Shown piece by piece: positions 34,670 to 59,826 of a DNA stretch of 64,000 nucleotides. The notes under the pieces were generated by a model. It did not search any database, was not told the DNA's origin, and saw only the letters and a program-made list of their open reading frames with translations. The first letter of the stretch is position 1; every line of letters begins with the position of its first letter. The position numbers and the translations under genes were made by a program. The DNA lies in IMG/VR virus record IMGVR_UViG_3300048008_000449, positions 140,773 to 204,772 of that record; one strand, written 5' to 3'.

Positions 34670-35302
34670 TTATTCTATAATTTTTTGCAGAGTTTGAGAC
34701 TTAAAATTTTCTAATGTAGATGTGTTAGTTAAGTTAATATCAAAATTCCAACCTGCCCAACTCCATTCGCTTTTATGTACATCAGGAAAAACAACAGACA
34801 TACTGTTATGTTCAACATTATTTGCACCTGCTTGATTAATACTAGAAGCAGTAGCCCACCATAATGGTTTCTCATTTCTCCAAACAACTGCTGTTGTTCC
34901 ACCTAATTTTTTAATTGCTTTAAGTTCATTAAAAAATCTACAGTCACTAATAACAACATTTTTTGTACACATCTCAATTTGACGTTCACATGCCGCAACC
35001 CAGATATCTGGATGGAAATGTGTTCTCAAAACATCAGTGCCTACGTGTTGTAATGCAAATCTTGGAGTAAAATTAGGAATATCTAAACGCTCAGCCCACC
35101 ACTCATCAACAGTTTCTCTCCATACTCTACTTTCTGATGTATTTCCTTCTAGTAGGATTCTGTCCCAACCAAATATATTTGCACATGCATCTTTTAATAC
35201 TCCTGCAAAACTAATACGTTGAAAGCCTTCTTCGATGAGAAAACCTGCGGCGGTGTCTTTTCCGTGACCAATAAGGCCACATATACCAATTACTTTTTTC
35301 AT
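34670..35302 (-). CDS. Deoxynucleoside monophosphate kinase (gp1-like)
   Basis: GLIGHGKDT, SFAGVLKD, TPRFALQHVGTD, SDCRFFNE. Confidence 0.92.
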   Translation of the reverse strand: MKKVIGICGLIGHGKDTAAGFLIEEGFQRISFAGVLKDACANIFGWDRILLEGNTSESRVWRETVDEWWAERLDIPNFTPRFALQHVGTDVLRTHFHPDIWVAACERQIEMCTKNVVISDCRFFNELKAIKKLGGTTAVVWRNEKPLWWATASSINQAGANNVEHNSMSVVFPDVHKSEWSWAGWNFDINLTNTSTLENFKSQTLQKIIE

Positions 35303-35308
35303 AAATTT

Positions 35309-35337
35309 ATTATAGTGGGTTTTTAATTATTTGTCAA
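35309..35337 (-). promoter_or_regulatory. Sigma70-type promoter of a leaderless dNMP kinase
   Basis: TTGACA-17-TATAAT-6 nt-ATG. Confidence 0.8.
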
Positions 35338-39411: not shown

Positions 39412-40617
39412 TTATTTTGATTTATAGTGAATTAATTTGTCATAATATAGTGCTAAAGTAGCCCATATTGCGTCTGGGTACAAGTTAGTATATTTGTTTC
39501 CCATTTTATGATAATTTTCCCATACTGTTTTACTTACATCAAACTTACTGTAATATTTCCAAAAATCAGTATCTGTTCTATCACTTAACATGTAATGATG
39601 TTTTATATATGTACTATTATCATTCCAAACATTACGCATTGCTCTATTGTAAGTTTTAGCCCCATATCCACGTTTTAAGCACCGTACAAGCGTTGTTATA
39701 CTGAATTGCGTCATAAACAGTGCATTACTTTCTAAAGGGTCTATAAAGCCGTTACTGAGCCCTACTGCAACTACATTATTGTGCCAGGGATTAGCTAAGA
39801 CACTAGGATTCCATTTTAACAGTCTAGGTGTTTTTCCCATAAAGGGAGTTCTGTGTGCATTTACTTTATTAAACTCTGCAAGTGCATCTTCGTCAGTTTG
39901 ATGTTTGCTACTAAACACATATCCTGTTCCAATTCTATTTGTTAAATCAATTATAAATTGCCAACCATTACTACGTGCTACGCTTTGAGTGTATCCTTGT
40001 ACATCATTATCTTGCAATTCAAAAGGACAAACCCATGCTCTATCTACTAAATGATTTTCTAATTGTACTTCAGTATTGTCTTTTACAAATTTTCTACGAA
40101 ACCCTGTGCAGTCTATATATAAATCATATCCCTCTGGTAACTCGTCTAATGTGTCTATAATGTGAGTTACATTTTTACAATTATTTTTAACTATGTCTCC
40201 GGCTTTTTCAGCATCTAAGTGATATGCAGTTGCTTGCCAGCCACCTTTGTGATATAGTTGATCATTAATGTTATGCTTATCAACAATACCACTATCGTAT
40301 TGTTGTTTCCATTTATCAAAAACATTATTATCATTAAACCAAAAGGTGAATGCAAACGGATCGCCATTTGGCTTATTCCATTGACTCTTTATGTTTCCAA
40401 ATTTCTTTTGTGCATTACTTTTTTCCATCCATTCGTCTTCTGACATTCCCATGTCTTCAAAGAATTGTGCAATCTGTGGTAATGTACTTTCGCCTACGCC
40501 TATAATAGGAATATCACTACTTTCAATAAGTGTAATATCATAATCTGGAAATTGTTTTTCTAAGTATCCTGCGGCCCACCATCCAGTAGTTCCGCCTCCA
40601 ATAATACAAATTTTCAT
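39412..40617 (-). CDS. Flavin-dependent tryptophan-halogenase-like protein
   Basis: IIGGGTTGW, IGVGESTLP, IDCTGF, RIGTGYVFS, GLSNGFIDPLES. Confidence 0.85.
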   Translation of the reverse strand: MKICIIGGGTTGWWAAGYLEKQFPDYDITLIESSDIPIIGVGESTLPQIAQFFEDMGMSEDEWMEKSNAQKKFGNIKSQWNKPNGDPFAFTFWFNDNNVFDKWKQQYDSGIVDKHNINDQLYHKGGWQATAYHLDAEKAGDIVKNNCKNVTHIIDTLDELPEGYDLYIDCTGFRRKFVKDNTEVQLENHLVDRAWVCPFELQDNDVQGYTQSVARSNGWQFIIDLTNRIGTGYVFSSKHQTDEDALAEFNKVNAHRTPFMGKTPRLLKWNPSVLANPWHNNVVAVGLSNGFIDPLESNALFMTQFSITTLVRCLKRGYGAKTYNRAMRNVWNDNSTYIKHHYMLSDRTDTDFWKYYSKFDVSKTVWENYHKMGNKYTNLYPDAIWATLALYYDKLIHYKSK

Positions 40618-40643
40618 AGTTGTTCCTTATATGTATTATTTAT

Positions 40644-40674
40644 AATAACGCAGGCGTATTTTACCTGCGTTATT
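40644..40674 (-). terminator. Terminator after sbmA
   Basis: AATAACGCAGG/CCTGCGTTATT. Confidence 0.7.
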
Positions 40675-40680
40675 AAATTT

Positions 40681-41652
40681 TTATTTTTCTTCAATTAGTC
40701 TTTCAAACTCTCTCAAACGTTTATATACGCTTGCTAGTTCAATAATAGTAGGCCATGCTTTAAGTATATATTGCATTGAACCTTCTACTCTACCAAAAGC
40801 TCTAATAATTTGTTGCATCACACCTAGTGTTACAACACCTGCTACAATAGCTGGTGCTAAAAATACATAAGCTGATAATACATTTGCTTGTAAATATGAA
40901 ATTCTACCTATATTAAAATACAAGTATCTAATATAAGATTTAAAGTGAATACTTCTTACATCTTGAAATAATTCATCAATTCTTTTAGGACGAATTGTCA
41001 CATCATCTTCTGCAATTACAAGTATTTTTCTGTAAGCTGCTTCTTTCTTTTGTAAATCATATTCTACTCCAACTAGACGTAATAACCAACCTAATCCAAT
41101 TAAGAATATTGTTCCTCCAATACTCCAAATTAACGCACCAGTTACTAGTCCATATTGCCAATCACCAAAGAAGAAGATTGGAATACCAACTGATAGTCCT
41201 AATAGAATAGGAACAAATTGTACTAGAACCATTACTGATTCAATTAAACTTGTACCAAGTCCTTCCATGATACGACTAAACTTAATAGTATCTTCTTGTA
41301 CACGTTGAGCTGCACCTTCAATAGTACGTGCTTTGTCGTATACACTATGATACCATTCAACCATTGCTGCTCTCCATCTAAACAAATAGTGTGCAGTAAA
41401 GTAACTAACAACTACGGCAATCAAAACATAAATTGCAGCCAAGTAAATAAAAGTTCCTAAACTACTCCAATATTCTGTAATTGTAATAGCGTTTGGTGCA
41501 CCAAGTGCTTTTTGAATCATATCGTAAAACTGCCCAAACCATTCATTAATTTTAACGTCAATTTGAACTTGTACCCATAATGAACTTAGGATAATAGCTG
41601 AACCCAGCCACGACCACAATGCCCATTGTTTTTGTGTGAAAAATCTAAACAT
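40681..41652 (-). CDS. sbmA: SbmA/BacA-family peptide transporter
   Basis: INEWFGQFYD, FRWRAAM, IEGAAQRVQEDT, QKKEAAYRK, WPTIIELASVYKRL; multiple TM helices. Confidence 0.9.
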   Translation of the reverse strand: MFRFFTQKQWALWSWLGSAIILSSLWVQVQIDVKINEWFGQFYDMIQKALGAPNAITITEYWSSLGTFIYLAAIYVLIAVVVSYFTAHYLFRWRAAMVEWYHSVYDKARTIEGAAQRVQEDTIKFSRIMEGLGTSLIESVMVLVQFVPILLGLSVGIPIFFFGDWQYGLVTGALIWSIGGTIFLIGLGWLLRLVGVEYDLQKKEAAYRKILVIAEDDVTIRPKRIDELFQDVRSIHFKSYIRYLYFNIGRISYLQANVLSAYVFLAPAIVAGVVTLGVMQQIIRAFGRVEGSMQYILKAWPTIIELASVYKRLREFERLIEEK

Positions 41653-44228: not shown

Positions 44229-44659
44229 TAATAGCAAGTGGTTGTTTATTTTTAAGCACAGACACAGGAAGAATAATGCTTCAACAACGAAGCGGTGAAG
44301 TTAATCACCCACGAACATGGGGTTTCTTTGGAGGCAAGGCTGAAAAAGGTGAAAGACCAACTGAAGCACTATTGCGTGAAATAGAAGAAGAGCTTGGATT
44401 AGTTCCAGATATAAAAAAAGTTATTCCTGTTAATAAATTTACTAGTCCTAATAAGAAATTTGTTTACCATACATTTTTAGTCACAGTTGAAGAGGAGTTT
44501 ATTCCTGTTCTTAATAACGAAAGTGATGGTTATTGCTGGATTAAAATTGGCAACTGGCCTAGACCGTTGCACCCTGGTGCAAAAATACAATGTAATTCAA
44601 AACAGTTTGTTAAAAAAATAAAAACAGTATACGAACAGTTTACTACATCGCTGGATTAA
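44225..44659 (+). CDS. Nudix hydrolase
   Basis: Nudix box GGKAEKGERPTEALLREIEEELG. Confidence 0.92.
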   Translation: MIIASGCLFLSTDTGRIMLQQRSGEVNHPRTWGFFGGKAEKGERPTEALLREIEEELGLVPDIKKVIPVNKFTSPNKKFVYHTFLVTVEEEFIPVLNNESDGYCWIKIGNWPRPLHPGAKIQCNSKQFVKKIKTVYEQFTTSLD

Positions 44660-45359
44660 TAATACCCATTTCTTTTCTACTGAATATATTATTTAAAAAT
44701 GAATTAAATACTTCTTCACTATCATATTGATGAATATCACTAAAATCTGGATCAATTTCATACATTTCAGAATTTGTTCTCATGCTATGTGAGAAACCCA
44801 ATGCAGTTGCAGTTTCTTTCCAACCATAATAACGTTTTAAATTAAAATTATTTTTTATTTCATTACATTCTATAGTAATTTGTTGTAGCATTCTTTCGTC
44901 ATTTTTATACCAAGTATATATTGGATATGTAATATCCCACCCACCTACATGTTTCCACCAATTAAAGCATTCTTGTGGTGTATCATAAAAAGACCAAAAC
45001 CTTGCTTTTGGAAATAGTTGTTTTAATAATGGCAAATGATAGCTAAACCAATGACTTTTAATAATTTTAGTTCCATAATTCCAATCAGTAAATGGTGCTT
45101 TAAATTCTTGTATTATTTCTTCTTTAGTTAATGTATCTAATATATCAAACTTATGTCCTACTGGATTATCAGGACCCCAATAAGCACCTCGATGCCATCC
45201 AACAACTTGTCCGTCAACTTTTTTTCTATATACAAAGTTATTCTTATTATCAGACAAATTAATATCTTTACATATAAGACTAAGCATACGAATTGCTCCA
45301 CTCCATCTAGATCCTGGAGCTCCTGTAACTATAATTAAATCTTCACCTTGATATTCCAT
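44643..45359 (-). CDS. Sulfotransferase-like/P-loop protein
   Basis: IVTGAPGSRWS, IIKSH, LFPKA. Confidence 0.55.
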   Translation of the reverse strand: MEYQGEDLIIVTGAPGSRWSGAIRMLSLICKDINLSDNKNNFVYRKKVDGQVVGWHRGAYWGPDNPVGHKFDILDTLTKEEIIQEFKAPFTDWNYGTKIIKSHWFSYHLPLLKQLFPKARFWSFYDTPQECFNWWKHVGGWDITYPIYTWYKNDERMLQQITIECNEIKNNFNLKRYYGWKETATALGFSHSMRTNSEMYEIDPDFSDIHQYDSEEVFNSFLNNIFSRKEMGIINPAM

Positions 45360-46168
45360 TAGTTTCCTTTATTAATTTCTTTTAAAATTTTGTTTGTAAG
45401 GTATTCATGTGTCTTAGGTCCTGGGTGTGTTTGGTCTCTTCCTAAATCTATCATTTCTTCTTTACTGTACTGTATTGATTTAATGTGTGTTGGTTCATAA
45501 TCATAAAACCAATGCTTTCTTCTTTCGTTTGGTTCTAATATATAATACTGTGCATTTGGAAATGATTGTAGTAACGCTAGTTCAAACATTTTAAATATTT
45601 TACCATTGCTTTGTTTAAAAGTTTCTCTAACAAGTTTTCTAACTTTTTCATCTTTTTCTTTTCTTAACCAAAATCGCATAAGCCAATTAGTATCATTAAC
45701 ACCCCAAAAATCAGTAAGTATAACATATTTTGGATTAAGTTTAAAATCAAATAGATTATCTGCCATATCAGTTAATGTATCAAAATCACTTATATTAAAA
45801 TGATTTAATGATAATTTTTTAGAAAGCAAATATGGTATACTCATTTCATATGGTATTCCAGTTCCTAATAATAAACTTCCGCCGGCAAATACTATACCAA
45901 CATCAGTTAAATCATCTGGACCTCTATATCCATATTTGTTCCATTTATAACTAAAGTCTAAATTAGTATCATTATCCCAATCAAGTTCTTGTATTGCATT
46001 AAAAGTAAAATGATCAGTTCCATTTTCTCCTACTTTGCATTTGTTTCCTGTATCATGCCGGCCATAATATTTTATTGTTTCATTTGGCAATCTTGGCTGT
46101 TTTTCAGCTTTTTCTTTTTGATTATAAAAGAACTTTGGATCTACCTCAGGAAAGTCGTTTTCTATCAT
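45359..46168 (-). CDS. SGNH/GDSL-like esterase or acyltransferase
   Basis: NKYGYRG, FAGGSLLLG, DLGRDQTHPG..H. Confidence 0.65.
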   Translation of the reverse strand: MIENDFPEVDPKFFYNQKEKAEKQPRLPNETIKYYGRHDTGNKCKVGENGTDHFTFNAIQELDWDNDTNLDFSYKWNKYGYRGPDDLTDVGIVFAGGSLLLGTGIPYEMSIPYLLSKKLSLNHFNISDFDTLTDMADNLFDFKLNPKYVILTDFWGVNDTNWLMRFWLRKEKDEKVRKLVRETFKQSNGKIFKMFELALLQSFPNAQYYILEPNERRKHWFYDYEPTHIKSIQYSKEEMIDLGRDQTHPGPKTHEYLTNKILKEINKGN

Positions 46169-47118
46169 ACTTTAATAACTCTATTAGGATCTGGATTATC
46201 AATCATGTGTTGTACTTTATCATTAATGAATCCAGTAAATTGGAAAGTAACTCTTGGTGTATATCCAAAGTTAGCTGTTCCATGTGGCATATTACACCAA
46301 TCGTATGTTATACATTCGCCTGCTTTATACTGATGATAATATGTATTACCAAATTGCCATACATGTCCATAATCCCAATCTTGTAGCATAACTAAAAACC
46401 TTCTTAATTTTAAAGGATTTTTATCAGCGCCAGCTTTAGTCCATACTTCACGCCATCCTGGTCTTGCATATCTCATTTGTTGATCAATATGAATAGGAGT
46501 AACTTGTCCTAGTCTTTGAATATGTAATCTGGATTGATGAACATCTACTCCTAATGCATCTATCATTCTAAGTAGTATTGCATACTCTGGTGATTCATTA
46601 CGCTTTGCGAAATAGTTTTTTCCATCTTTATCAAATCTTGCTCTAACAACCATGTCATGATACATACTACTTACGTCTTCTTTACCAGAAGCAAGTAGAA
46701 CGTCTTGTATTTCTCCGTCATGTAAATCTTTATCTTGTTTACTTAGATTACGCTGTCTATAATTTCCTATAGTCATTTCTGTTGCAGTTTTTAGTGCATG
46801 CTGTACTGCTTCACTAAAATCTCCTTCAAATCTACAAGGTACTACAAATGTTTCTTCATGTGGATCAGCAAAAGTATCAAAGTGCCAATCGGCACGTAAT
46901 TTATTATGCTCCCATCTGCTTGGAACTCCATCTACTTTAAAAATGTTATCCATTTTGTCATGTTTTTCCATCTGTTCATTACTATACATTTCATCTTTAT
47001 ATGCTGAATCAATTTGGGTATTACCTTCTTGATGTTTATGTTCTGCTTTTTTAACTGCATCTACAAGGTCATCTATTTTATCGCCACTATAATAATTTTT
47101 ATCTGTTTTTTGTTTCAT
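46165..47118 (-). CDS. Cupin/2OG-Fe(II) hydroxylase-like
   Basis: TPIHID, LQDWDYG, PHGTANFG..PR. Confidence 0.7.
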   Translation of the reverse strand: MKQKTDKNYYSGDKIDDLVDAVKKAEHKHQEGNTQIDSAYKDEMYSNEQMEKHDKMDNIFKVDGVPSRWEHNKLRADWHFDTFADPHEETFVVPCRFEGDFSEAVQHALKTATEMTIGNYRQRNLSKQDKDLHDGEIQDVLLASGKEDVSSMYHDMVVRARFDKDGKNYFAKRNESPEYAILLRMIDALGVDVHQSRLHIQRLGQVTPIHIDQQMRYARPGWREVWTKAGADKNPLKLRRFLVMLQDWDYGHVWQFGNTYYHQYKAGECITYDWCNMPHGTANFGYTPRVTFQFTGFINDKVQHMIDNPDPNRVIKV

Positions 47119-47119
47119 G

Positions 47120-47698
47120 TTAATGTTCTTTACAGTTTGGTAACATACTAATAATTGTCTTTAAGTTATTTTCAGTTAAAAACACACTCATCAATATATG
47201 ATATATGTCGTCTGACATAGCAAAGCTACCGTGTTGTTTTCTTGTATTTAATATATATGGAACACCAGGTTTAAAATCTATACGTTTGTTTTCGTATATA
47301 AAATTCCATTGACTAACATCTGTTTTATTTAATGGAATGAAAATTCTAATTTGTGGATTAAGTCTATATGCATCTCTATGCATACTAAAGAACGAACCTG
47401 CATTCATGTGTGCAGCTCTACATCTAGCTAAATTTTCCCATTTAGTAAAAAAATCAATAATTGATGGGCAATTGTGTGTATTAACATTTGGCTCTTGGTA
47501 TTCTGCATGTTTGCCTTTATGGTCAAGTGTTAAATCACCAACTGGTCCTGTTAAATTTACTCCACGTTTTCCGTTAGGTCCTTGTTCCCATTCTAATTGT
47601 TTAAGTTCGTTGATAGCTTCGTCTGAATTAAACTTATAATCTAATTCAAATATATCTCCGTAACTATTCAGTAGTGGTAGTAGATTTATATCTTTCAT
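47120..47698 (-). CDS. Aspartyl/asparaginyl beta-hydroxylase-like
   Basis: GSFFSMHRD, RIFIPL, LNTRKQHGS. Confidence 0.75.
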   Translation of the reverse strand: MKDINLLPLLNSYGDIFELDYKFNSDEAINELKQLEWEQGPNGKRGVNLTGPVGDLTLDHKGKHAEYQEPNVNTHNCPSIIDFFTKWENLARCRAAHMNAGSFFSMHRDAYRLNPQIRIFIPLNKTDVSQWNFIYENKRIDFKPGVPYILNTRKQHGSFAMSDDIYHILMSVFLTENNLKTIISMLPNCKEH

Positions 47699-47948
47699 TT
47701 TTTGGTTGCTTTCTTAATTCGTCCATATCTTTTATATGCTGAATACGCATAATTTGATGATACATTCTAATTACACCTTTAGGTGCATCTGCTTTCCATA
47801 AGAAAGGAAATATTCCGTGTGCAATACTTTTAAATGCAATTATAATAAGTGACCAGCTATTTTTAAAACTGTGCCATAAATGATACCAGTAACCCCATCC
47901 TGTTTCTACTTTAAGATGATGTACTGATTCCTTGAACCATTTTAGCAT
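47664..47948 (-). CDS. DUF6356-like small protein
   Basis: HLKVETGWGYWYHL...AHGIFPFL. Confidence 0.6.
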   Translation of the reverse strand: MLKWFKESVHHLKVETGWGYWYHLWHSFKNSWSLIIIAFKSIAHGIFPFLWKADAPKGVIRMYHQIMRIQHIKDMDELRKQPKNERYKSTTTTE

Positions 47949-47951
47949 TTA

Positions 47952-49049
47952 TCATTCCGTCACTTTCTTTTTCATACTTGCAACAAATTGTTCACGTAAC
48001 CATTCATAGTCATTAATTTTGTTAAGAGCATCAACATCTTTTGCATGTTCTTCGCCATACAATTTTCCTTCTAATGCACCTTTAATACAATAACGTCCAA
48101 ATCTTGCACCGTTGTCTAATGTACACCATGCTTCTAATCTGTCTACTGTATCTTTTCTAGGACTATCTGTTTGCTGAATTCCACTTGAAAGTTTTACACA
48201 TTCACGGAATGCACTACGCCATGTTCTATATGGATCTTTGTTAAATCTTGTGATGTTTGATACATCTGTAATTGGTTGATAAAAACTAACACCTGTTGTA
48301 AAGTCTGGAAGTATATGTCCTAACTCTAACAATTGTTCTCTTGGAAATAATTTTACACCTCCATATCCATATTCTAAATCATTAATAGGATTTTTAGCAC
48401 TCCACACATATGTTGTATTTTTACGTTTACTCATTGGTGGAATATAATCAAAACTAAAATGCGACATTACGTCTGCATCTGCGTCAACAATATATACCAT
48501 TTCTGATTTAGCTAATTCTGCAACTTTTCTGTGTGCATTACCAATGCCTTCAACATTCTTAACATGTTGTGCATCTTTAAATCTATTTCTTAGTTTTTGG
48601 AAATTTTCGTCTGCTTCAGCTTCATGGAAACTAATCATAAAAATATCAAATTCTGCTACATGATAACTTGAAACAATTTTATTTTGTACTGTAGTGTGTG
48701 ATACACCATTTGTTGGAACTAAATGAATATCTCCCCAACTAACTGGTCTGTTTGTTCTTTTAATTACTCTAGGAAATGTGTGTATTACAGATTTTGCAAT
48801 ACGATCGGTTGGTCTATATTGCCAAGGAAAGTTAGGATTAATTTCAGTTTCATCAAATACTACCCAAGCCATATCAGCTGTATCTTTGTATTGTGATGCT
48901 TCTTTTAGTAATTCTGTTTCTTCTGTAATTTTTGTAGCAGTTCTAATTATTGGATATGATTCGAACATAAATCTTTTTAGTCTATCCCAAGGCGTTACTA
49001 CATTTTGTCCTTGGAACTCTTTACCTTTGTTATTAATTAAATTAATCAT
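47952..49049 (-). CDS. Glycosyltransferase-like (GT-A) protein with an internal duplication
   Basis: FMISFHE, VDADA (DxD), YGGVKLF, WRSAFRE; likely start MINLIN at 49049. Confidence 0.7.
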   Translation of the reverse strand: MINLINNKGKEFQGQNVVTPWDRLKRFMFESYPIIRTATKITEETELLKEASQYKDTADMAWVVFDETEINPNFPWQYRPTDRIAKSVIHTFPRVIKRTNRPVSWGDIHLVPTNGVSHTTVQNKIVSSYHVAEFDIFMISFHEAEADENFQKLRNRFKDAQHVKNVEGIGNAHRKVAELAKSEMVYIVDADADVMSHFSFDYIPPMSKRKNTTYVWSAKNPINDLEYGYGGVKLFPREQLLELGHILPDFTTGVSFYQPITDVSNITRFNKDPYRTWRSAFRECVKLSSGIQQTDSPRKDTVDRLEAWCTLDNGARFGRYCIKGALEGKLYGEEHAKDVDALNKINDYEWLREQFVASMKKKVTE

Positions 49050-49692
49050 TGCAATCGCCTTTAACTGTAAATGCACGTGTTCCTATATGTGCAATTCTGT
49101 CACTTAATTCGTGACTAATATTTACTTCATATCCTGCATTATTTGCAAGGCTACAAAAGTATATATCTTCTCCTACAAGGCTAGTATATGTTTCATTATA
49201 TTCTATCTTATAGTGAGGTAGAGGAATATTTTCGTATACTTCTCTTCTTACTAACATCATTCCACTACCAACTGCCCAAACTTTTTCAATTCCTGTACCT
49301 GTTAATACTCTACTATCTAAGTTTGTTTTGCTTTTAAAAGCAACAGGCCTGTGTGGTGGTACTCTTGTTGCATAATTACCAGCAATAATATCTTTATTGG
49401 CTGCTAATAATATATTTAGCGTATCTACCGGAAACTGCATATCAGCATCTATCCACATAATATGTGTACAATTTGTTTCTAGTGCTTCAGTTACAAGTTG
49501 CTGACGTTGCATAGCTACTTCGCTTCCCATATTAAAATGTAAGCTAGTAGATAGTCCAGTCTCACCACACTTTTTTTGAAGCATGGCAAGGCTGTACGCA
49601 AAGACCGCGGTAACATTATCTCGCACAGGAACACATATTGCTACATTTGCGGTATTGTTATTTTTGTGAAAATAATTAGGTACGCTAACCAT
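49042..49692 (-). CDS. GT2-family glycosyltransferase
   Basis: VAICVP, HIMWIDADM, VGSGMMLV, GEDIYFC, HIG. Confidence 0.85.
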   Translation of the reverse strand: MVSVPNYFHKNNNTANVAICVPVRDNVTAVFAYSLAMLQKKCGETGLSTSLHFNMGSEVAMQRQQLVTEALETNCTHIMWIDADMQFPVDTLNILLAANKDIIAGNYATRVPPHRPVAFKSKTNLDSRVLTGTGIEKVWAVGSGMMLVRREVYENIPLPHYKIEYNETYTSLVGEDIYFCSLANNAGYEVNISHELSDRIAHIGTRAFTVKGDCND

Positions 49693-49695
49693 TAA

Positions 49696-50118
49696 TTATT
49701 TTTCAGAAGCAAGTTCTGTTTGAAGTTCTGCTTCTACTTGCTGTACTTCATAATTAAGTTGTTTAGCAATAGCTGTAGCTTGTTTAACACATGCGGCAAA
49801 TGCTTCATCTTCTAAAGCTACCATATAGTTCATATGTTCAGGCTGTACTTTACCAATTGTTAAAATATCAATAGCCGCTAATTTTGATAAACGTGCTACC
49901 CAATATTCTTCTTCAGACTCTTCAATATTTGCTAATAGTGCATCAATATCATGCTCAGCTGCAAAATCTTTGTGGATTGCTTCTAAAACTGGTAAGTCTG
50001 GATGTTGTTGTTCACGTGCTTGCATAAGCTCCGTGGTTAATACTTGTGCTTTACGTGACGCTGTTGGATGTGCGCCAAGCACGAACGTTTCGATCTCAAA
50101 TCGTGTTCTTATACTCAT
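49696..50118 (-). CDS. Hypothetical helical protein, first gene of the modification operon
   Basis: FEIETFV..HPT, EEEYWVARL; AGGAG RBS. Confidence 0.65.
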   Translation of the reverse strand: MSIRTRFEIETFVLGAHPTASRKAQVLTTELMQAREQQHPDLPVLEAIHKDFAAEHDIDALLANIEESEEEYWVARLSKLAAIDILTIGKVQPEHMNYMVALEDEAFAACVKQATAIAKQLNYEVQQVEAELQTELASEK

Positions 50119-50168
50119 TGTTTTCTCCTGTGTTGAGTTTACATTTTTTGTAAATATAATTAGTTACT

Positions 50169-50197
50169 ATTTTACAATAAAACGATGATGTTGTCAA
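50169..50197 (-). promoter_or_regulatory. Probable sigma70-type promoter of the glycosyltransferase operon, overlapping a terminator
   Basis: TTGACA-17-TAAAAT. Confidence 0.6.
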
Positions 50198-50214
50198 CAA
50201 GTAACAACACCATC
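50184..50214 (-). terminator. Terminator after the 73-aa gene
   Basis: GATGGTGTTGTTA/TGACAACATCATC with GU pairs, then GTTTT. Confidence 0.7.
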
Positions 50215-50227
50215 ATTAAATTAATTC

Positions 50228-50449
50228 TTATGGATGTGTTGGTTCGTCAGTTGTCGGATCTACTCCGGAACTCGTACCCCACGTGTTAGGGTTCTGCCAT
50301 CCGCCAAACGTAGCCGATAAACTAATGTTTGATGTTACTGATGGTGTAATAAACGCACCTAATTGACTTAGTGTTACTGTTCCACTTAGTCCAAAGTAGT
50401 TACGTACTTGTCCCATGCTGATTGCTGAACCTGTTGCTGGTAATGCCAT
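50228..50449 (-). CDS. 73-aa Ser/Thr/Gly-rich peptide, mini fibre-tip adhesin-like or precursor peptide
   Basis: MALPATGSAISMGQV..FG start; own late box, AGGAG RBS and terminator. Confidence 0.7.
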   Translation of the reverse strand: MALPATGSAISMGQVRNYFGLSGTVTLSQLGAFITPSVTSNISLSATFGGWQNPNTWGTSSGVDPTTDEPTHP

Positions 50450-50562
50450 TTGTTGACTCCTTGCTTATAATTAACGTTAATCACAAGCATATTGCTTGCT
50501 TAACTATTTATCTATATGTCTCATAACATATAAGAGTATATTATTTTTTCTTTAATATAATA

Positions 50563-51924
50563 TTAAGGTGTTATTTGTAGTGTAGATGGTACTAATTGTA
50601 TCCAATTTGTTCCGTCATATCCTTCAAATATTTTAGTATCAGTATTAAAATAAAACTGTCCTTCTACCGGACTAACCGGTCTTTGTGCTTCTGTACCTTT
50701 AGGTGCTACAAACGTAGTAGGTGCATTAGCATAACTTTGTAAATTAGCTGTAACTGTAGTTATCTGCCCATCTGTATACGAATTTGCTGTATTTACGGCT
50801 GCTGTTTTAGTTATTAAATCTTGTTGTTGTGCAAATAAATTAGATACTGCTGTTGTTGAATAATTTGATAAATCATTTGGCTGTATTACATTATTAGCAT
50901 CAGTTAAATCACTTATATCTAATCCAGTTATTGTTGCATTAGTAACATCCATTGTATCATTAACTGTTAACTCATCTATTGATGCTACTGTTACTGCTAA
51001 CTGTGAATCGTTGTTGCCAGTTCCTACTGTAAGTACTGGGTTATTTGCTAGTGTATCGCCAAGGTCACCATATAGTGTTCCTGTTAAATAAGCATTGTGT
51101 CCAAAAAATGTATCTGCTCCAGTAGTATTAACTATTGTTGCTCCGCCTGATGATGATGGTGCTTTTAGTTTTTCAACTTCAGCATCGTGAATTGTTAATG
51201 TATCTCTTACTGCTCCAGTAGTAATGATTGGAACTAGTGAAGTTGGAGATGTTACATCACCATGCACATCACCATAAAGTCTACCTGTTACATTACCATT
51301 TAAACTACCAGTAAGAGAGACTGTATTACTTAGTGCTACACTAACACGAGCGTCTGCATAAGAATTAACTTCGGTTGCAAAATCTACAAAGGCAAATTTA
51401 CTTGTGCTACTGTCGTATAAAAGAAAATCTCCATTTGCTACAGTATCACTAGTATGTCCAACATCTGATAATCCAATTAGTGATTGTGAATTTTGTGATG
51501 CTGTAATGCGTGTGTTAATTTCACTTTCAAGGTTTACATAACTCCATGTTGAACCATCATATAAAATTAAATCACCAGTTGTAGCTGATCCATTATCAAT
51601 ATCAGTTAAATCAGATAATGTGGAAGGAATATTTCCTGCAATAATTATATCTGCAGTAAGTGTTCCTACTGATAAATTTCCTTTTTGTGTTATTTGTGCT
51701 GCTTCAATTTGGTTACTTGACTCTGCTCCAATGTATCCATCAATTACATAAAATGTCTGTGTTTCTGCGTCTCTAACAAATCCTGCATAATTGTTAATAC
51801 CAATTTTTCCTAAGAAGCCTATATCAGATATACCTGAATTATCCTTTCCTAAAATTAGGATAGGATCGGAAAAAGCAGCATCACTAGTGTCAATGTTTGA
51901 CGTTTGAATTTTTCTAAAAGACAT
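50563..51924 (-). CDS. Tail fibre-like structural protein
   Basis: LSDLTD and GDLILYD repeats, G-x-L-x-G repeats, C-terminal GTEAQRP..GQFYFNTD..FEGYDG. Confidence 0.7.
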   Translation of the reverse strand: MSFRKIQTSNIDTSDAAFSDPILILGKDNSGISDIGFLGKIGINNYAGFVRDAETQTFYVIDGYIGAESSNQIEAAQITQKGNLSVGTLTADIIIAGNIPSTLSDLTDIDNGSATTGDLILYDGSTWSYVNLESEINTRITASQNSQSLIGLSDVGHTSDTVANGDFLLYDSSTSKFAFVDFATEVNSYADARVSVALSNTVSLTGSLNGNVTGRLYGDVHGDVTSPTSLVPIITTGAVRDTLTIHDAEVEKLKAPSSSGGATIVNTTGADTFFGHNAYLTGTLYGDLGDTLANNPVLTVGTGNNDSQLAVTVASIDELTVNDTMDVTNATITGLDISDLTDANNVIQPNDLSNYSTTAVSNLFAQQQDLITKTAAVNTANSYTDGQITTVTANLQSYANAPTTFVAPKGTEAQRPVSPVEGQFYFNTDTKIFEGYDGTNWIQLVPSTLQITP

Positions 51925-51982
51925 TTTTGTGTTCCTTACGTATATAGTAGTATTTATCTATTACGTAATTATATTTAGCCAT

Positions 51983-52012
51983 AAAAAAAGCAGGGTAAAA
52001 ATACCCTGCTTT
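51983..52012 (-). terminator. Intrinsic terminator
   Basis: AAAGCAGGGTA/TACCCTGCTTT plus U tract. Confidence 0.85.
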
Positions 52013-52032
52013 AGTTTAATTAGTAATTTAAA

Positions 52033-53181
52033 TTACTTTTTAGCTTTAAGTTCTTCTACTTGAGCTGATAATTCTTTAACTGCTTCAATTAGTAGACCTG
52101 TGATGTTTCCGTATGCTACTGAATGAACACCTTCTGCATCTGTGTGTACTGCTTCTGGAAGAACTGCTTTTAGTTCTTGGGCGATAACACCAGTTGAAGT
52201 TGATCCATCTGAGATACGATCAAAAGTTACACCACGAATTGCTTCAACTTTACCTAAAGCACCGTCAATTACTTGTACGTTTGTTTTTAGAGTATCGTCT
52301 GAGTAAGCTGTAATATCACCAGTTGCTGTAAAGCTACCTGTGTATGAACCACTCATTGCAAACGATGTACCAGTTAATGATAAACCGTTGCCTGCAGTGT
52401 AAGTTGTATCTGCATCACCATTATCAGCATATACTTTTGCTGCTGCTAGTGCTGCGTCTGCTTTAGATGTTGCGTCTGCTGCCGCTGTTGCTACTGCGTC
52501 TGCTTCTGCTGTATCTGTGTAAGCATAAGAGATAGTAATTGCTTCAGCTTTTTTAGCATCAGCATATGTATTAGATGCTGAAATAGCTGCTGCTTCTGCC
52601 GCATCTGCTTTAGTAGTTGCGTCTGCTGCCGCTGTAGAAGCCGCTGATGAAGTAACACTAGCGATTGCTGAACTTAGTTCTGAATCTGTTGCCATTGCAT
52701 CTTGGATTTCTTTCAATGTATCAAACGCTGCGCCTGCACCGTTAGTTACTGTTGAAACTGCTGCCGCTTGTGCCGCATCAACATAAGTTTTGTTTGCCGC
52801 ATCGTTACCTGATGTTGGTGCTGCTAAATCAGTAATTTTCTTGCTGTTCATGTCGATGGTTTCTTTCATGTCCAGTGTATCGTCTATACGAACACCTTTT
52901 TTGAAACGTGTTGTGTTGTTTACGTTAGTACCAAAACTTGCGTTGTTACCATCGTCAGCTGCACCATCTGTAGTTGTTAGTTTTGTTGCTAGAATTGAAA
53001 TGTTACGTTCCATGTCCGCCATACGTCTTAGAGACGATTTTGAACCTGAAATTGTAATTTCTTCTGCACCTGGATCACCAGTAAACTCTGTTAGTGTACC
53101 AGTTGAATCGTACTTATATTTCTTTGATTTATCGAATGAAAAGGTACCTGTAGCACCATTACTTCTTACTTTTCTTGCCAT
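52033..53181 (-). CDS. Tail fibre with a C-terminal intramolecular chaperone (Peptidase S74)
   Basis: YSDDTLKTNV...RGVTF...GVIAQEL..VLPEAV...LIEAVKEL. Confidence 0.85.
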   Translation of the reverse strand: MARKVRSNGATGTFSFDKSKKYKYDSTGTLTEFTGDPGAEEITISGSKSSLRRMADMERNISILATKLTTTDGAADDGNNASFGTNVNNTTRFKKGVRIDDTLDMKETIDMNSKKITDLAAPTSGNDAANKTYVDAAQAAAVSTVTNGAGAAFDTLKEIQDAMATDSELSSAIASVTSSAASTAAADATTKADAAEAAAISASNTYADAKKAEAITISYAYTDTAEADAVATAAADATSKADAALAAAKVYADNGDADTTYTAGNGLSLTGTSFAMSGSYTGSFTATGDITAYSDDTLKTNVQVIDGALGKVEAIRGVTFDRISDGSTSTGVIAQELKAVLPEAVHTDAEGVHSVAYGNITGLLIEAVKELSAQVEELKAKK

Positions 53182-53203
53182 TTTAATTCTCCTTTAGAGT
53201 TGT

Positions 53204-53288
53204 TTAGCCACGTAGTAGAACTCTGTTCCACCATAGCACTTATTAAGTGCCTAAGTAGGGGGTTTGGCTCCCCCTACCTTTGGACTAA
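53204..53288 (-). ncRNA. Predicted four-way-junction structured RNA between two fibre genes
   Basis: Three hairpins closed by TTAGTCCA/TGGCTAA; see findings. Confidence 0.5.
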
Positions 53289-53294
53289 TCTTTA

Positions 53295-54737
53295 TTAGCT
53301 AACTAATTTCCATCCTTTGACTTCAATTTCGTCGCCTACTTCAATAACATTCGAGTTGAATGTTACTACACCTGTTGATGTGTTAACTGAACTTAATTCA
53401 GCTGGTCTAGCCAGTTGTCTGTTAACGTATACTGTGTAATCATCTGCTCCAACAACATCAGTAAATGTATATGCTAGTGTTGCCGCATTAGTTACATCAG
53501 TTACTGAACTGTGGAATGTTGAAGTTGAAATATTTGCTTCAATTCCTGCTACTGCTGTTGCAATTGCTGCATCACGTGCTGTTGCTTCTGATGCTACTTT
53601 AGAAGTTGCATCTGCACTTGCTGTAGCTTCAGCCGCTGATTGAGCTGCGTTTGCTTTAGCTGTTGCATCTGCTGCCGCTGATGCAATTGCATCTGCTTCT
53701 GCTGTATCTGCATAAGATTGTAATGATGTAGTTACTGTAGCAATCTCTGTATCAGTATATGTATTTGCTGACGTTCCACTTGACGAAGCACTTGATGCAA
53801 TCGCTGCTGTGTAAGCTGTAGTAATTGCTGTTTCACGTGTATCAGTGTAAGTGCCTGCTGCTGAAATTGCATCTGCTTCTGCTGCATCTGCTTTAGTAGT
53901 TGCATCTGTAGCCGCTGTAGTAAGTGCATTAGATACTGTGTTGTCAGTGTAATTACCTGCTGATGCAATTGCCGCTGTATCACCTGCTACTCTGTTTGAT
54001 GTTTCTGTTGATACTAGTGTGTTAAGAGCTGCTACGTCTGCTACTCTTGCCGCATTAGCTGAAACAATCGCTGCTTGGTTAGTAGAGATATCAGCTGCGT
54101 TAGTTGCAATGTTTGTATTAGCTGTAGTAAGTGCAGTTGTGTTAGTTGCAATATTAGCTGTTACTGTTGCACTAAAGTTAGCGTCATCGCCTAAGGCGTT
54201 AGCTAATTCATTTAATGTATCTAATGCACCAGGTGCACCGTTGATAACATTTGCAACTTGCTGGTCTACATATGCTTTGTTTGTTACGTCAGTTGTATCT
54301 ACTGGTGTTGAGACATTAACGATTCTGTTTGAATCCATGTCAATTTTATCACCAAATGTTACGGCTGCGCCGCCAGCGTCAGTAATTCTTTTACCAGACG
54401 CCATTTGTAATGTTGCGTTTATTGCTAGTGGTACCTGAGATGATAAAGTTAAAGCACCAGTACCTTCTGTCTTAATGGTAAGTCCTTGGTCAGTGTCAGA
54501 TCTAACAATAATAGTTCCAGAATCGTCTTCCAAAACTTTTTGGTTGTTAATGAATAGTGATCCTTGTGAAAGATATAAGTCTCTCCACTTGAATGAAGTA
54601 GAACCTAAATCGAAACCTGTTGTACCATCTGAATCAACATTAGGTAGGATTGAACCACCCATTGTTAAGTTTGCTAATAATTCAGAGGCGTCATCAGTTT
54701 TGAAACCACCATCAATTATAAATTTTCTTTGTGCCAT
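53295..54737 (-). CDS. Tail fibre-like coiled-coil protein
   Basis: DLGSTSFKWRDLYL, NKAYVD, APGALDTLNELA, Ala/Thr heptads. Confidence 0.75.
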   Translation of the reverse strand: MAQRKFIIDGGFKTDDASELLANLTMGGSILPNVDSDGTTGFDLGSTSFKWRDLYLSQGSLFINNQKVLEDDSGTIIVRSDTDQGLTIKTEGTGALTLSSQVPLAINATLQMASGKRITDAGGAAVTFGDKIDMDSNRIVNVSTPVDTTDVTNKAYVDQQVANVINGAPGALDTLNELANALGDDANFSATVTANIATNTTALTTANTNIATNAADISTNQAAIVSANAARVADVAALNTLVSTETSNRVAGDTAAIASAGNYTDNTVSNALTTAATDATTKADAAEADAISAAGTYTDTRETAITTAYTAAIASSASSSGTSANTYTDTEIATVTTSLQSYADTAEADAIASAAADATAKANAAQSAAEATASADATSKVASEATARDAAIATAVAGIEANISTSTFHSSVTDVTNAATLAYTFTDVVGADDYTVYVNRQLARPAELSSVNTSTGVVTFNSNVIEVGDEIEVKGWKLVS

Positions 54738-54841
54738 TTTATGACTCCTTTTTGATCAAAAAAGTTATTGCTACATTGAGTAGCAATGTATTTATTGCTT
54801 TTTTTTAACTATTAACTGCTTTTATAACAATTTTTAGTTAA

Positions 54842-54875
54842 AAGAGGCATACCCTGTTACCAAGCTATGCCTCTT
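54842..54875 (-). terminator. Intrinsic terminator
   Basis: AAGAGGCATA/TATGCCTCTT. Confidence 0.7.
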
Positions 54876-54905
54876 AATTTAGGTTATTAAGAAGCGTTAT
54901 GTTTC

Positions 54906-59672: not shown

Positions 59673-59826
59673 AGAGATTTCTCCAATCAAATATATTTGA
59701 TTTGCATGTAATCTTTACATGCAAAAGTATAACCACAGCTTAACGAGGTTATACTACATAAGGTCATTACAACCTATGCAATGTATTTATTAGATTTGGG
59801 AGTTTATTAAGTAATATGATTATTAT

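What the first reader, a model, noticed from the sequence alone, without database searches (positions are those of the whole stretch)
44643..50511. 73-aa peptide gene heading a glycosylation/hydroxylation/sulfation operon: candidate phage peptide or fibre-tip modification system
Seen: a stand-alone 73-aa gene with its own late box, RBS and terminator sits directly upstream of eight tightly coupled genes: a helical protein, GT2, GT-A, DUF6356, two HxD...H hydroxylases, SGNH-like and sulfotransferase-like. The peptide ends ISLSATFGG|WQNPNTWGTSSGVDPTTDEPTHP, a Gly-Gly followed by a tail rich in Trp, Asn/Asp, Pro and Ser/Thr. These are the residues that halogenases, AspH-type hydroxylases and O-glycosyltransferases act on. 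A halogenase-like gene and an SbmA transporter lie about 3-5 kb from the operon end. Known: MALPxxGxIS-type N-termini are typical of small fibre-tip adhesin proteins, and double-Gly leaders mark many RiPP precursors. Inference: either a minimal adhesin whose specificity is supplied by enzymatic decoration, or a RiPP-like phage peptide.
Basis: partly seen in the sequence, partly recalled or inferred. Interest (0 to 1): 0.8.

Follow-up and report, generated by a model that had tools for sequence, protein, structure and literature searches.

The report
Small fibre-linked protein plus glycosyltransferase operon
An uncultured marine jumbo phage encodes, right after its tail-fibre genes, a tiny conserved fibre-module protein followed by a separately promoted pair of sugar-adding enzymes. 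This gene set recurs across many related phages, probably decorates the phage's own fibres or the host surface, and is not a modified-peptide (RiPP) pathway.

Summary
The genes are real and lie where stated. A 73-aa late gene has its own promoter box, RBS and terminator. Eight tightly packed genes follow it.

The "peptide heads the operon" reading is only partly right.
- The 73-aa protein is a stand-alone copy of a ~57-residue module. In related phages that module is the N-terminus of 480–690-aa adhesin-like proteins at the same position, just after S74-type fibre genes.
- Its Gly-Gly is not a leader boundary. Conservation runs on through GGWQNPN; only the last 5–30 residues vary.
- The eight genes have their own sigma70-like promoter, buried in the peptide's terminator. 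The promoter is present in 17 of 23 distinct relatives.
- Only peptide + helical protein (phrog_1409) + two GT-A glycosyltransferases form the conserved core (52/52 close loci, and in deeper lineages).
- DUF6356, the two HxD…H proteins, the SGNH-like protein and the sulfotransferase are an accessory block. Their presence does not track the peptide's tail.
- SbmA and the halogenase are also accessory.

The closest homologues of the small GT sit between capsid and tail genes in podophage-like genomes. I therefore favour virion/fibre glycosylation (0.4) over host-envelope remodelling (0.33). RiPP is about 0.04. The substrate is inferred, not shown.

The parts
52033..53181 (-). Fibre protein (382 aa) with a C-terminal Peptidase_S74 intramolecular-chaperone domain
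   Evidence: Pfam PF13884, 3.3e-13. In most relatives an S74-type fibre gene lies directly upstream of the small gene.
50563..51924 (-). Fibre-like protein (453 aa) directly upstream of the small gene; has its own late box at 51957
   Evidence: ORF. Its C-terminal 380-447 matches the N-terminal parts of several structural PHROGs. Late box.
50505..50511 (-). Late-promoter-like box (g)ATAAATA, 56 nt upstream of the ATG
   Evidence: Present upstream of the homologous gene in 22 of 23 distinct relatives.
50471..50498 (-). 5' UTR: hairpin (50498-50484) and palindrome TTAACGTTAA (50480-50471)
   Evidence: The hairpin keeps its pairing with different sequences in relatives. The palindrome, or its variant TTATCGATAA, occurs in 18/23 relatives and once in the window.
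50228..50449 (-). 73-aa late gene: three I-S/T-x-S/G...F/Y-G repeats (residues 1-56, conserved through GGWQNPN) plus a variable Ser/Thr/Pro/Asp tail
50181..50217 (-). Terminator-like 16-bp hairpin after the small gene
   Evidence: A hairpin at this position is conserved in relatives.
50169..50197 (-). Sigma70-like promoter TTGACA-N17-TAAAAT, with the -35 inside the 3' arm of the hairpin
   Evidence: 11 of 12 consensus matches, the best in the 11 kb scanned. Present in 17/23 relatives against 0.0065 expected per shuffled 200 nt. The same promoter type precedes the dNMP kinase gene.
49696..50118 (-). 140-aa helical protein, phrog_1409 family, function unknown; preceded by the conserved leader GTAAACTCAAC..ACAGGAGAAAAC
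49042..49692 (-). 216-aa GT-A-type glycosyltransferase (phrog_1574; Anp1-like DxD region; invariant D82, D84)
47952..49076 (-). 374-aa GT-A/GT2-fold glycosyltransferase (invariant D198, D200); probable true start near 49049
47664..47948 (-). 94-aa DUF6356 protein (accessory block)
   Evidence: Pfam PF19883, 2.5e-8. Present only in a subset of relatives.
47120..47698 (-). 192-aa protein with an invariant HRD...H motif; cupin/2OG-oxygenase-like by motif only (accessory block)
46165..47118 (-). 317-aa protein with an invariant H210-x-D212...H279; Asp/Asn beta-hydroxylase-like lead (accessory block)
45359..46168 (-). 269-aa protein, weak SGNH/AlgX-like lead (accessory block)
44643..45359 (-). 238-aa sulfotransferase-like protein (accessory block)
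   Evidence: Atlas neighbours score 0.95-0.98 and carry PF13469/PF00685.

Best explanation
This is the distal end of the phage's fibre (host-recognition) region. It contains two transcription units that travel together.

Unit 1 is a late, strongly expressed 73-aa gene.
- Its first ~56 residues are a conserved module. In related phages the same module is the N-terminus of large adhesin-like proteins.
- I infer that the module docks the protein onto the mature fibre, probably the tip left after the S74 chaperone domain is cleaved off. This leaves a short Ser/Thr/Pro-rich tail exposed. In relatives, a whole C-terminal domain is exposed instead.

Unit 2 starts at a sigma70-like promoter hidden in the terminator of unit 1.
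- It encodes a helical protein of unknown role and two GT-A glycosyltransferases.
- I infer that these use host nucleotide sugars to glycosylate phage surface proteins, namely the small protein's tail and/or the Ser/Thr/Ala-rich fibres.
- In this phage, five add-on genes would further decorate the same product: DUF6356, two HxD...H proteins, an SGNH-like protein and a sulfotransferase.

Shown: gene anatomy, promoters, deep synteny, the module architecture and the GT-A fold. Inferred: docking, the acceptor and the chemistry.
For: Small gene.
- It is a late gene under purifying selection.
- The module heads 482-687-aa proteins at the same position, after S74 fibres and before homologues of the 140-aa and GT genes.
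- Distant stand-alone members sit 12 nt after an S74 fibre gene.
- The core is as conserved as core virion proteins: 80% identity against 60-67% for the enzymes and 35-60% for the fibres.

Linkage.
- The cassette peptide/140 aa/GT216/GT374 is present in 52/52 close loci.
- It is also present in lineages whose gp15 is only 33-39% identical. There the small gene and the next gene are 11 nt apart.

Enzymes.
- GT374 has a GT-A fold.
- The closest annotated homologues of GT216 (34-40% identity) lie between the major capsid and tail genes in four GenBank phage genomes. The same order (scaffold or portal, capsid, phrog_3982 protein, GT, tail tubular A) was found in 9 MAG contigs.
- Virion glycosylation on C-terminal tails is known in mycobacteriophages (as summarised in PMC12619734).
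Against: - No direct evidence for any acceptor.
- In the window's clade the GT operon has a sigma70-like promoter like the dNMP kinase gene, not a late box. That suits early host or DNA modification at least as well.
- In another lineage the same promoter type also precedes the adhesin-like gene, so timing is unclear.
- phrog_1409 occurs in cyanophages with no detected GT in the adjacent gene.
- A 25%-identical GT216 relative sits between primase and helicase in a pelagiphage.
- The families of the accessory block (LpxO/OlsC-type hydroxylases, AlgX-type SGNH proteins, sulfotransferases) usually act on envelope lipids and glycans (established knowledge).
- The AF2 model of the small protein is poor (pLDDT 65).
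- Synteny in phage structural regions can persist without functional coupling.
Confidence: 0.4

Rival explanations
1. Host-envelope remodelling. The GT operon and its accessory block are expressed early from the sigma70-like promoter. They alter host LPS, capsule or membrane lipids by glycosylation, hydroxylation, O-acyl handling and sulfation. The purpose would be to block superinfection or to stop progeny sticking to debris. The small protein is an unrelated fibre component that merely sits next door.
For: - A sigma70-like promoter is conserved in 17/23 relatives. The same promoter type serves dNMP kinase, whereas structural genes have ATAAATA boxes.
- The literature reads GTs inside the fibre 'host recognition cluster' of marine myophages as O-chain modification that prevents coinfection (PMC7029224).
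- Atlas neighbours include bacterial hydroxylase-sulfotransferase fusions, and AlgX-type SGNH proteins appear among structural matches to an Atlas neighbour of g269.
- The accessory block is variable, like an island.
Against: - The closest GT216 homologues are embedded between capsid and tail genes in podophage-like genomes.
- The core cassette is fixed next to the small gene in every relative, while neighbouring fibres and island genes vary.
- In deeper lineages the small gene and the next gene are 11-12 nt apart, so they are co-transcribed.
- No membrane-spanning segments are evident in either GT sequence (read from the sequence).
Confidence: 0.33
2. The small protein is a fibre assembly helper that does not stay in the virion, in the manner of T4 gp57A or T4-type gp38. 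The GT operon serves one of the other roles.
For: - Its position directly after the distal fibre gene is the classic place for fibre chaperones (established knowledge).
- It is small, partly helical and poorly folded on its own.
- Its core is highly conserved despite variable fibres.
Against: - The same module heads 480-690-aa proteins with propeller-like C-terminal domains (PD40 hit). That looks like a virion receptor-binding protein rather than a chaperone.
- It has its own late promoter, a strong RBS and a terminator, which suggests high copy number.
Confidence: 0.12
3. RiPP-like phage peptide. The conserved N-terminus acts as a leader and the variable C-terminal tail as a core. The tail is glycosylated, hydroxylated, sulfated or halogenated and then released or exported.
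For: - Conserved N-terminus with a variable tail.
- SunS, a glycocin S-glycosyltransferase, is among many GT2 fold hits.
- 46%-identical GT relatives in other phages sit beside radical SAM/SPASM genes.
- SbmA and a halogenase are nearby.
Against: - GG is not at the conserved/variable boundary; WQNPN after it is invariant across the close family.
- Most family members have only a 5-6-residue tail.
- The module is the N-terminus of large proteins.
- Tail type does not co-vary with enzyme content.
- SbmA and the halogenase are accessory.
- No leader peptidase, RRE or exporter was seen among the genes examined.
- The peptide and the enzymes have different promoters.
Confidence: 0.04
4. DNA modification. 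The GTs glycosylate modified bases in phage DNA to evade restriction.
For: - Early-type promoter.
- A distant GT216 relative lies in a replication module.
- Phage GTs often act on DNA (PMC12619734).
Against: - The cassette has a fixed position at the fibre end, and close homologues lie in capsid-tail modules.
- No base-hypermodification genes were seen among the genes examined in this window. The rest of the 205-kb genome was not examined.
Confidence: 0.05

Closest known systems
Host recognition cluster (HRC) of marine T4-like pelagimyophages and cyanomyophages (PMC7029224)
   Same: An island inside the structural region mixes tail-fibre genes with glycosyltransferases and other envelope-type enzymes. 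It is variable between relatives and comes from the marine habitat.
   Different: - This phage is not a described pelagimyophage. Its nearest cultured relatives are PA5oct-like jumbo phages, at 38% identity in the tail sheath.
- Within the island there is an invariant four-gene core (small module protein, phrog_1409, two GT-A enzymes). The passages of that paper retrieved do not describe it.
- That paper proposes host O-chain modification, without a test.
Mycobacteriophage virion glycosylation (Freeman et al. 2023, as summarised in PMC12619734)
   Same: Phage-encoded GT2-type enzymes, with glycans on the C-terminal tails of virion subunits. The Che8 GT is among the fold hits of GT374.
   Different: - There is no sequence-level relationship.
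- The presumed acceptor here would be a fibre-end protein, not the capsid or tail tube.
- Glycosylation has not been demonstrated here.
T-even gp38 fibre-tip adhesins / fibre chaperones
   Same: A small gene directly downstream of the distal fibre gene. In long relatives, an N-terminal part attaches and the remainder is exposed.
   Different: - No Pfam GP38 hit and no PDB hit.
- Fold hits to two 'Gp38 domain' proteins are non-significant (E about 1) and come from a model with pLDDT 65.
- No glycine-rich hypervariable segments.
- The core is highly conserved, not variable.
Double-glycine-leader RiPP precursors (class II bacteriocins, glycocins such as sublancin/SunS)
   Same: A small ORF with a GG, near a GT2-type enzyme. 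The N-terminus is conserved and the C-terminus is variable.
   Different: - GG is not at the boundary.
- No C39 peptidase or exporter.
- The module is also part of large proteins.
- It has a late virion-type promoter.

Membership tests
Double-glycine-leader RiPP precursor | The GG (GA/GS) site marks the boundary between a conserved leader and a variable core | tested here: not met
   Conservation continues through GG-WQNPN. Variability starts 6 residues later. GG ends a thrice-repeated motif.
Double-glycine-leader RiPP precursor | A C39-peptidase ABC exporter or other leader protease in the cluster | tested here: not met
   None among the nine genes or their neighbours (Pfam/PHROG/NCBIfam). 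SbmA is an importer family and is absent from many relatives.
Double-glycine-leader RiPP precursor | The precursor co-varies with its tailoring enzymes | tested here: not met
   The long tail occurs without the hydroxylase/sulfotransferase block (L008-L013, L021). The block occurs with a short tail (L022, L024, L025, L051).
gp38-type fibre-tip adhesin (Pfam GP38) | Significant sequence or structure match to GP38 or to a solved gp38 | tested here: not met
   No Pfam hit in 77 family members. No PDB hit. BFVD hits have E 0.9-1.1 from a model with pLDDT 65.
gp38-type fibre-tip adhesin (Pfam GP38) | Gene directly downstream of the distal fibre gene | tested here: met
gp38-type fibre-tip adhesin (Pfam GP38) | Bound to the fibre tip in the virion | not testable with these tools
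   Needs virion proteomics or cryo-EM.
GT-A / GT2 glycosyltransferase (374-aa protein) | GT-A Rossmann-like fold with a DxD motif | tested here: met
   AF2 pLDDT 82.7. Foldseek hits RmlT, PcManGT, SunS, WrtF, K4CP, GtrB and TarS at 1e-5 to 1e-3, with low TM-scores (0.19-0.32, partial matches). D198 and D200 are invariant. PF00535/PF13641 hit distant homologues.
GT-A glycosyltransferase (216-aa protein) | Profile match to a GT family and a DxD motif | tested here: inconclusive
   Anp1 scores 25.9 bits against a cut-off of 28.8. PHROG glycosyltransferase families score 8e-5 and 4e-4; phrog_1574 scores 1.6e-26. D82 and D84 are invariant. Homologues are annotated 'putative glycosyltransferase'.
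Asp/Asn beta-hydroxylase-type 2OG oxygenase (PF05118), for the 317-aa and 192-aa proteins | Profile match plus an HxD...H iron triad | tested here: inconclusive
   No Pfam hit. The triads are invariant in shallow alignments. The 317-aa protein has Atlas neighbours with PF05118. The 192-aa protein has only a motif-level alignment to a PF05118 phage protein, E 0.43, and no Pfam family in any listed homologue.
Sulfotransferase (PF13469/PF00685), for the 238-aa protein | Profile match / PAPS-binding fold | tested here: inconclusive
   No direct Pfam hit. Atlas feature neighbours score 0.95-0.98 with PF13469/PF00685. Structural matches of TM 0.55-0.61 are to the model of the top Atlas neighbour, not of this protein.
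Phage virion glycosylation system | Glycans on virion proteins that depend on phage GT genes | not testable with these tools
   Needs glycoproteomics. The only indirect support is the placement of GT216 homologues between capsid and tail genes.
Host recognition cluster of marine T4-like myophages | Variable island in the structural region that holds fibres plus GT/envelope-type genes | tested here: met
   Fibres 50563-59690, GTs and the accessory block, SbmA and halogenase all lie next to gp15-like and neck-like genes. Content varies among relatives.

The most novel reading that the evidence does not exclude
The small protein is the dedicated acceptor of a phage-encoded glycosylation pathway. 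In some phages the pathway also sulfates, hydroxylates or O-acylates. A conserved 56-residue anchor clips onto the S74-processed fibre tip. The enzymes then build a glycan on the anchor's tail or on its invariant Ser45. The fibre would then end in a carbohydrate rather than a protein domain, and host recognition or shielding would be set by swapping enzymes, not by mutating an adhesin.
Probability: 0.15. Interest if true: 0.85.

Novelty: new variant of a known kind. Interest (0 to 1): 0.5.

Why it matters
Glycosyltransferases mixed with fibre genes in marine myophages have so far been read, without tests, as host O-antigen modifiers. This analysis shows an invariant core inside that variable island. 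The core is a small protein family with no Pfam or NCBIfam match and only a weak PHROG hit, one helical protein and two GT-A enzymes. It is conserved from the window's clade into lineages sharing only about 35% identity in tail proteins.

The closest relatives of the small GT are embedded in capsid–tail modules of unrelated phages. If the enzymes act on the virion, this would extend phage virion glycosylation from mycobacteriophage capsids and tails to the fibres of abundant uncultured marine phages. That would bear on host range, grazing and immune-like recognition.

Even if they act on the host, the cassette gives a defined, testable unit: four genes with known promoters.

Tried and rejected
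- **Near-identical DNA in cultured phages:** none. tblastn of the small protein finds only weak N-terminal similarity to KVP40.0254-like proteins (hhalign probability 90.7% over 33 columns).
- **Distant and long family members against cultured phages:** no match.
- **PDB sequence or profile searches** for GT374, GT216, the small protein, the 140-aa, 192-aa and 317-aa families: nothing meaningful. A TMEV VP4 hit at E 0.017 is treated as chance.
- **NCBIfam:** nothing.
- **AF2 of the small protein:** poor (pLDDT 65), so its fold hits are not used as evidence.
- **Are the 192-aa and 317-aa proteins paralogues?** hhalign finds no relationship.
- **Is the gene after cyanophage phrog_1409 (Syn19_046) a GT?** No. 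That weakens a functional tie between phrog_1409 and glycosylation.
- **Metatranscriptome contigs:** fragmentary and low depth. The small gene has the highest depth in two of four runs, but contigs carry no direction and DNA carry-over cannot be excluded. This is not used beyond 'present in RNA libraries'.
- **Rfam:** no known RNA in the intergenic regions.
- **'Moraphage' jumbo lineage paper:** no evidence this window belongs to it.
- **N-X-S/T sequon in 'NISLS':** rejected, because the third position varies.

Full report
**What is there.** All genes of the finding lie on the minus strand. Tail-fibre genes of 1594, 480, 382 and 453 aa come first. The 382-aa one carries a Peptidase_S74 chaperone domain. 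They are followed by a 73-aa ORF (50228-50449) and eight tightly packed ORFs: 140, 216, 374, 94, 192, 317, 269 and 238 aa, ending at 44643. The last one converges on a NUDIX gene and a gp15-like tail sheath stabiliser on the plus strand. The window is 100% identical, gene by gene over the region compared, to a 204.8-kb IMG/VR contig. No similar DNA exists in cultured phages. The nearest cultured relatives are PA5oct-like, Phosso and Atu_ph07 jumbo myophages, at 35-40% protein identity.

The small gene has a late-type box (g)ATAAATA 56 nt upstream of its ATG, an AAGGAG RBS and a 16-bp terminator hairpin. In this window, ATAAATA sits in the intergenic DNA upstream of most structural genes, including the tail sheath and the fibres, and almost never elsewhere. 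The ORF is a real gene. It has 275 database relatives. Differences from 15 relatives fall on the third codon position 315 times against 84 on the second, and synonymous codon changes outnumber non-synonymous ones 239 to 160. SbmA/BacA and a tryptophan-halogenase family protein lie 3-5 kb away, each with its own late box.

**Enzyme labels.**
- The 374-aa protein is a GT-A/GT2-fold glycosyltransferase. Its AlphaFold model has pLDDT 82.7. Foldseek matches RmlT, PcManGT, the LH3 GT domain, SunS, WrtF, K4CP, GtrB and TarS, as well as viral GTs including Che8. TM-scores are low (0.19-0.32), so the matches cover only part of the model. D198 and D200 are invariant. Pfam GT2 hits appear in distant homologues.
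- The 216-aa protein is GT-like. It matches phrog_1574 at 1.6e-26, PHROG glycosyltransferase families, and Anp1 just under cut-off. D82 and D84 are invariant.
- DUF6356 passes Pfam's threshold.
- The 238-aa protein has sulfotransferase neighbours in the ESM Atlas.
- The 317-aa protein has Asp/Asn-hydroxylase-family neighbours.
- The 269-aa protein has only a weak SGNH/AlgX-like lead.
- The 192-aa protein has only an invariant HRD...H motif, and none of its listed homologues (143 found, best 120 listed) carries a Pfam family.

**The small protein is a module, not a leader plus core.**
- Among 57 IMG/VR loci the protein is conserved from Met1 through ...SATFGGWQNPN. After that it carries a variable tail of 5-30 residues. 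Most members are only 60-61 aa long.
- The Gly-Gly closes the third copy of a repeated I-S/T-x-S/G...F/Y-G(G) motif. It is followed by the invariant WQNPN, so it is not a leader boundary.
- A profile search without length limits found 74 cluster representatives. Most are 36-108 aa. The same ~57-residue module is also the N-terminus of proteins of 165-687 aa.
- Those of 482, 679, 520, 687 and 492 aa start MALPATGSTITMSDIR... and continue into large C-terminal domains. One of them has a PD40 propeller repeat.
- The genes for two of them lie exactly where the 73-aa gene lies: giant S74 fibre, module protein, 125-aa homologue of the 140-aa protein, 194-aa Anp1-like GT, 875-aa protein ending in a GT374-like domain, then NUDIX and gp15 on the other strand.
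- Other distant stand-alone members sit 12 nt after an S74 fibre gene and are followed by the same genes. The same holds on a 248-kb contig binned with a Flavobacteriaceae MAG.
- The core of the small protein is as conserved as core virion proteins: median 80% identity where the GTs and gp15 are 60-65% and the adjacent fibres 35-60%. That points to a conserved binding partner rather than to the variable host receptor.
- No known family matches. Pfam, NCBIfam and PDB give nothing, and PHROG gives a weak hit. The AlphaFold model is poor (pLDDT 65). Its fold hits to 'Gp38 domain' proteins are non-significant.

**Linkage to enzymes.**
- Peptide + 140 aa + GT216 + GT374 are present in the same order in all 52 close loci. 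The first three are also present in lineages whose gp15 is 33-39% identical.
- The five further genes occur only in 11 loci. The long WGTSSGV... tail occurs without them, and they occur with short tails.
- SbmA is missing from about half of the relatives and the halogenase from most.
The glycosyltransferase linkage is strong.

**Two transcription units.**
- The 3' arm of the peptide's terminator contains TTGACA, followed after 17 nt by TAAAAT. This is 11 of 12 consensus matches, the best in 11 kb.
- The arrangement is present in 17 of 23 distinct relatives, against 0.0065 expected by chance. A near-invariant leader, GTAAACTCAAC..ACAGGAGAAAAC, lies before the 140-aa gene.
- The other strict match of this promoter type next to an identified gene precedes a dNMP kinase gene. 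In T4 the homologous gene is not late (established knowledge).
- In the window's clade the enzymes are therefore probably not in the late class, unlike the small gene.
- This cuts both ways. In deeper lineages the small gene and the next gene are 11-12 nt apart and must be co-transcribed. In another lineage sigma70-like promoters precede both genes.

**What the enzymes act on.** This cannot be settled here.
- For virion proteins:
  - The closest annotated homologues of GT216 (34-40% identity) lie between the major capsid gene and tail genes in four GenBank phage genomes.
  - The same order (scaffold or portal, capsid, phrog_3982 protein, GT, tail tubular A) is seen in 9 MAG contigs.
  - The cassette is fixed beside the small gene while the rest of the island varies.
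  - The small protein's tail is Ser/Thr/Pro-rich, like the glycosylated C-termini of mycobacteriophage virion proteins (PMC12619734).
- For the host envelope:
  - The promoter type.
  - The published reading of GTs in the fibre 'host recognition cluster' of marine myophages (PMC7029224).
  - The usual substrates of LpxO/OlsC-type hydroxylases, AlgX-type SGNH proteins and sulfotransferases (established knowledge).
- For DNA: only the promoter type and a 25%-identical relative inside a replication module.
- Two-domain relatives of GT374 in other phages sit among GT8-like, radical SAM/SPASM, SGNH-like and Asp_Arg_Hydrox genes. This shows that the GT family recruits varied tailoring enzymes but does not identify the acceptor.

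**Expression.** Four marine RNA libraries contain fragmentary, low-depth contigs across the region, and the small gene is highest in two of them. The contigs carry no strand information and DNA carry-over cannot be excluded.

**Verdict.** The features are real and non-random. Host-envelope remodelling is a close rival (0.33). The RiPP half fails three defining tests. Mixing fibre genes with GTs is already described for marine myophages. The invariant four-gene core and the small-module family were not described in anything I searched. I rate it a new variant of a known kind, with interest 0.5.

Noticed in passing
window 50471-50511 (minus strand): The 5' UTR of the small gene has three parts: a late box, a hairpin that keeps its pairing through different sequences in relatives, and a palindrome TTAACGTTAA (TTATCGATAA in other relatives). 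The palindrome is present in 18/23 relatives and only once in the window. It may be an operator or an mRNA-stability element.
   Followed up: partly
window 50119-50142 (minus strand): The leader GTAAACTCAAC..ACAGGAGAAAAC before the 140-aa gene is nearly invariant among relatives whose proteins are only 60-85% identical, and it is unique in the window. It is a candidate translational operator.
   Followed up: partly
window 39412-41652: SbmA/BacA-family transporter (Pfam 2e-138) and tryptophan-halogenase-family protein (1e-72), each with its own late-type ATAAATA box inside the structural region. Both are accessory among relatives.
   Followed up: partly
window 34670-35337: A dNMP kinase gene (phrog_139) with a strict sigma70-like promoter sits in the middle of late-box-driven structural genes.
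   Followed up: no
window 50429-50443 (residues 3-7 of the 73-aa protein): The family's N-terminus, M-A-L-P-A-T-G, fits the LPxTG pattern in most members. It is at the wrong end of the protein and has no membrane anchor, so it is not a sortase signal as defined. Probably a structural motif.
   Followed up: no
L069:4745-14943 and L071:7001-14743: 46%-identical two-domain relatives of the 374-aa GT lie in other phage-like contigs among GT8-like, radical SAM/SPASM, SGNH-like and Asp_Arg_Hydrox genes. This looks like a larger phage glycan or peptide tailoring cluster.
   Followed up: partly
L075:116-6615: The same cassette (S74 fibre, module-like small ORF, 148-aa protein, GT) lies on a 248-kb contig binned as a Flavobacteriaceae MAG. 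This is either a host clue or mis-binning of a jumbo phage.
   Followed up: partly
L064:5649-8256, and L074, L076, L078-L081, L083, L084, L086: In podophage-like contigs the GT216 family is fixed in the order scaffold (and portal, where the contig reaches it), major capsid, phrog_3982 100-aa protein, GT, tail tubular A.
   Followed up: partly
L061:10464-13091: An 875-aa relative of the 374-aa GT carries four or five tandem degenerate GT-like repeats before the catalytic domain.
   Followed up: no
window 50563-50760 (residues ~380-447 of the 453-aa fibre protein): The C-terminal stretch ...GQFYFNTDTKIFEGYDGTNW... matches the N-terminal region of about ten PHROG families of unknown or structural function. 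It appears to be a widely shared fibre-joining motif.
   Followed up: no
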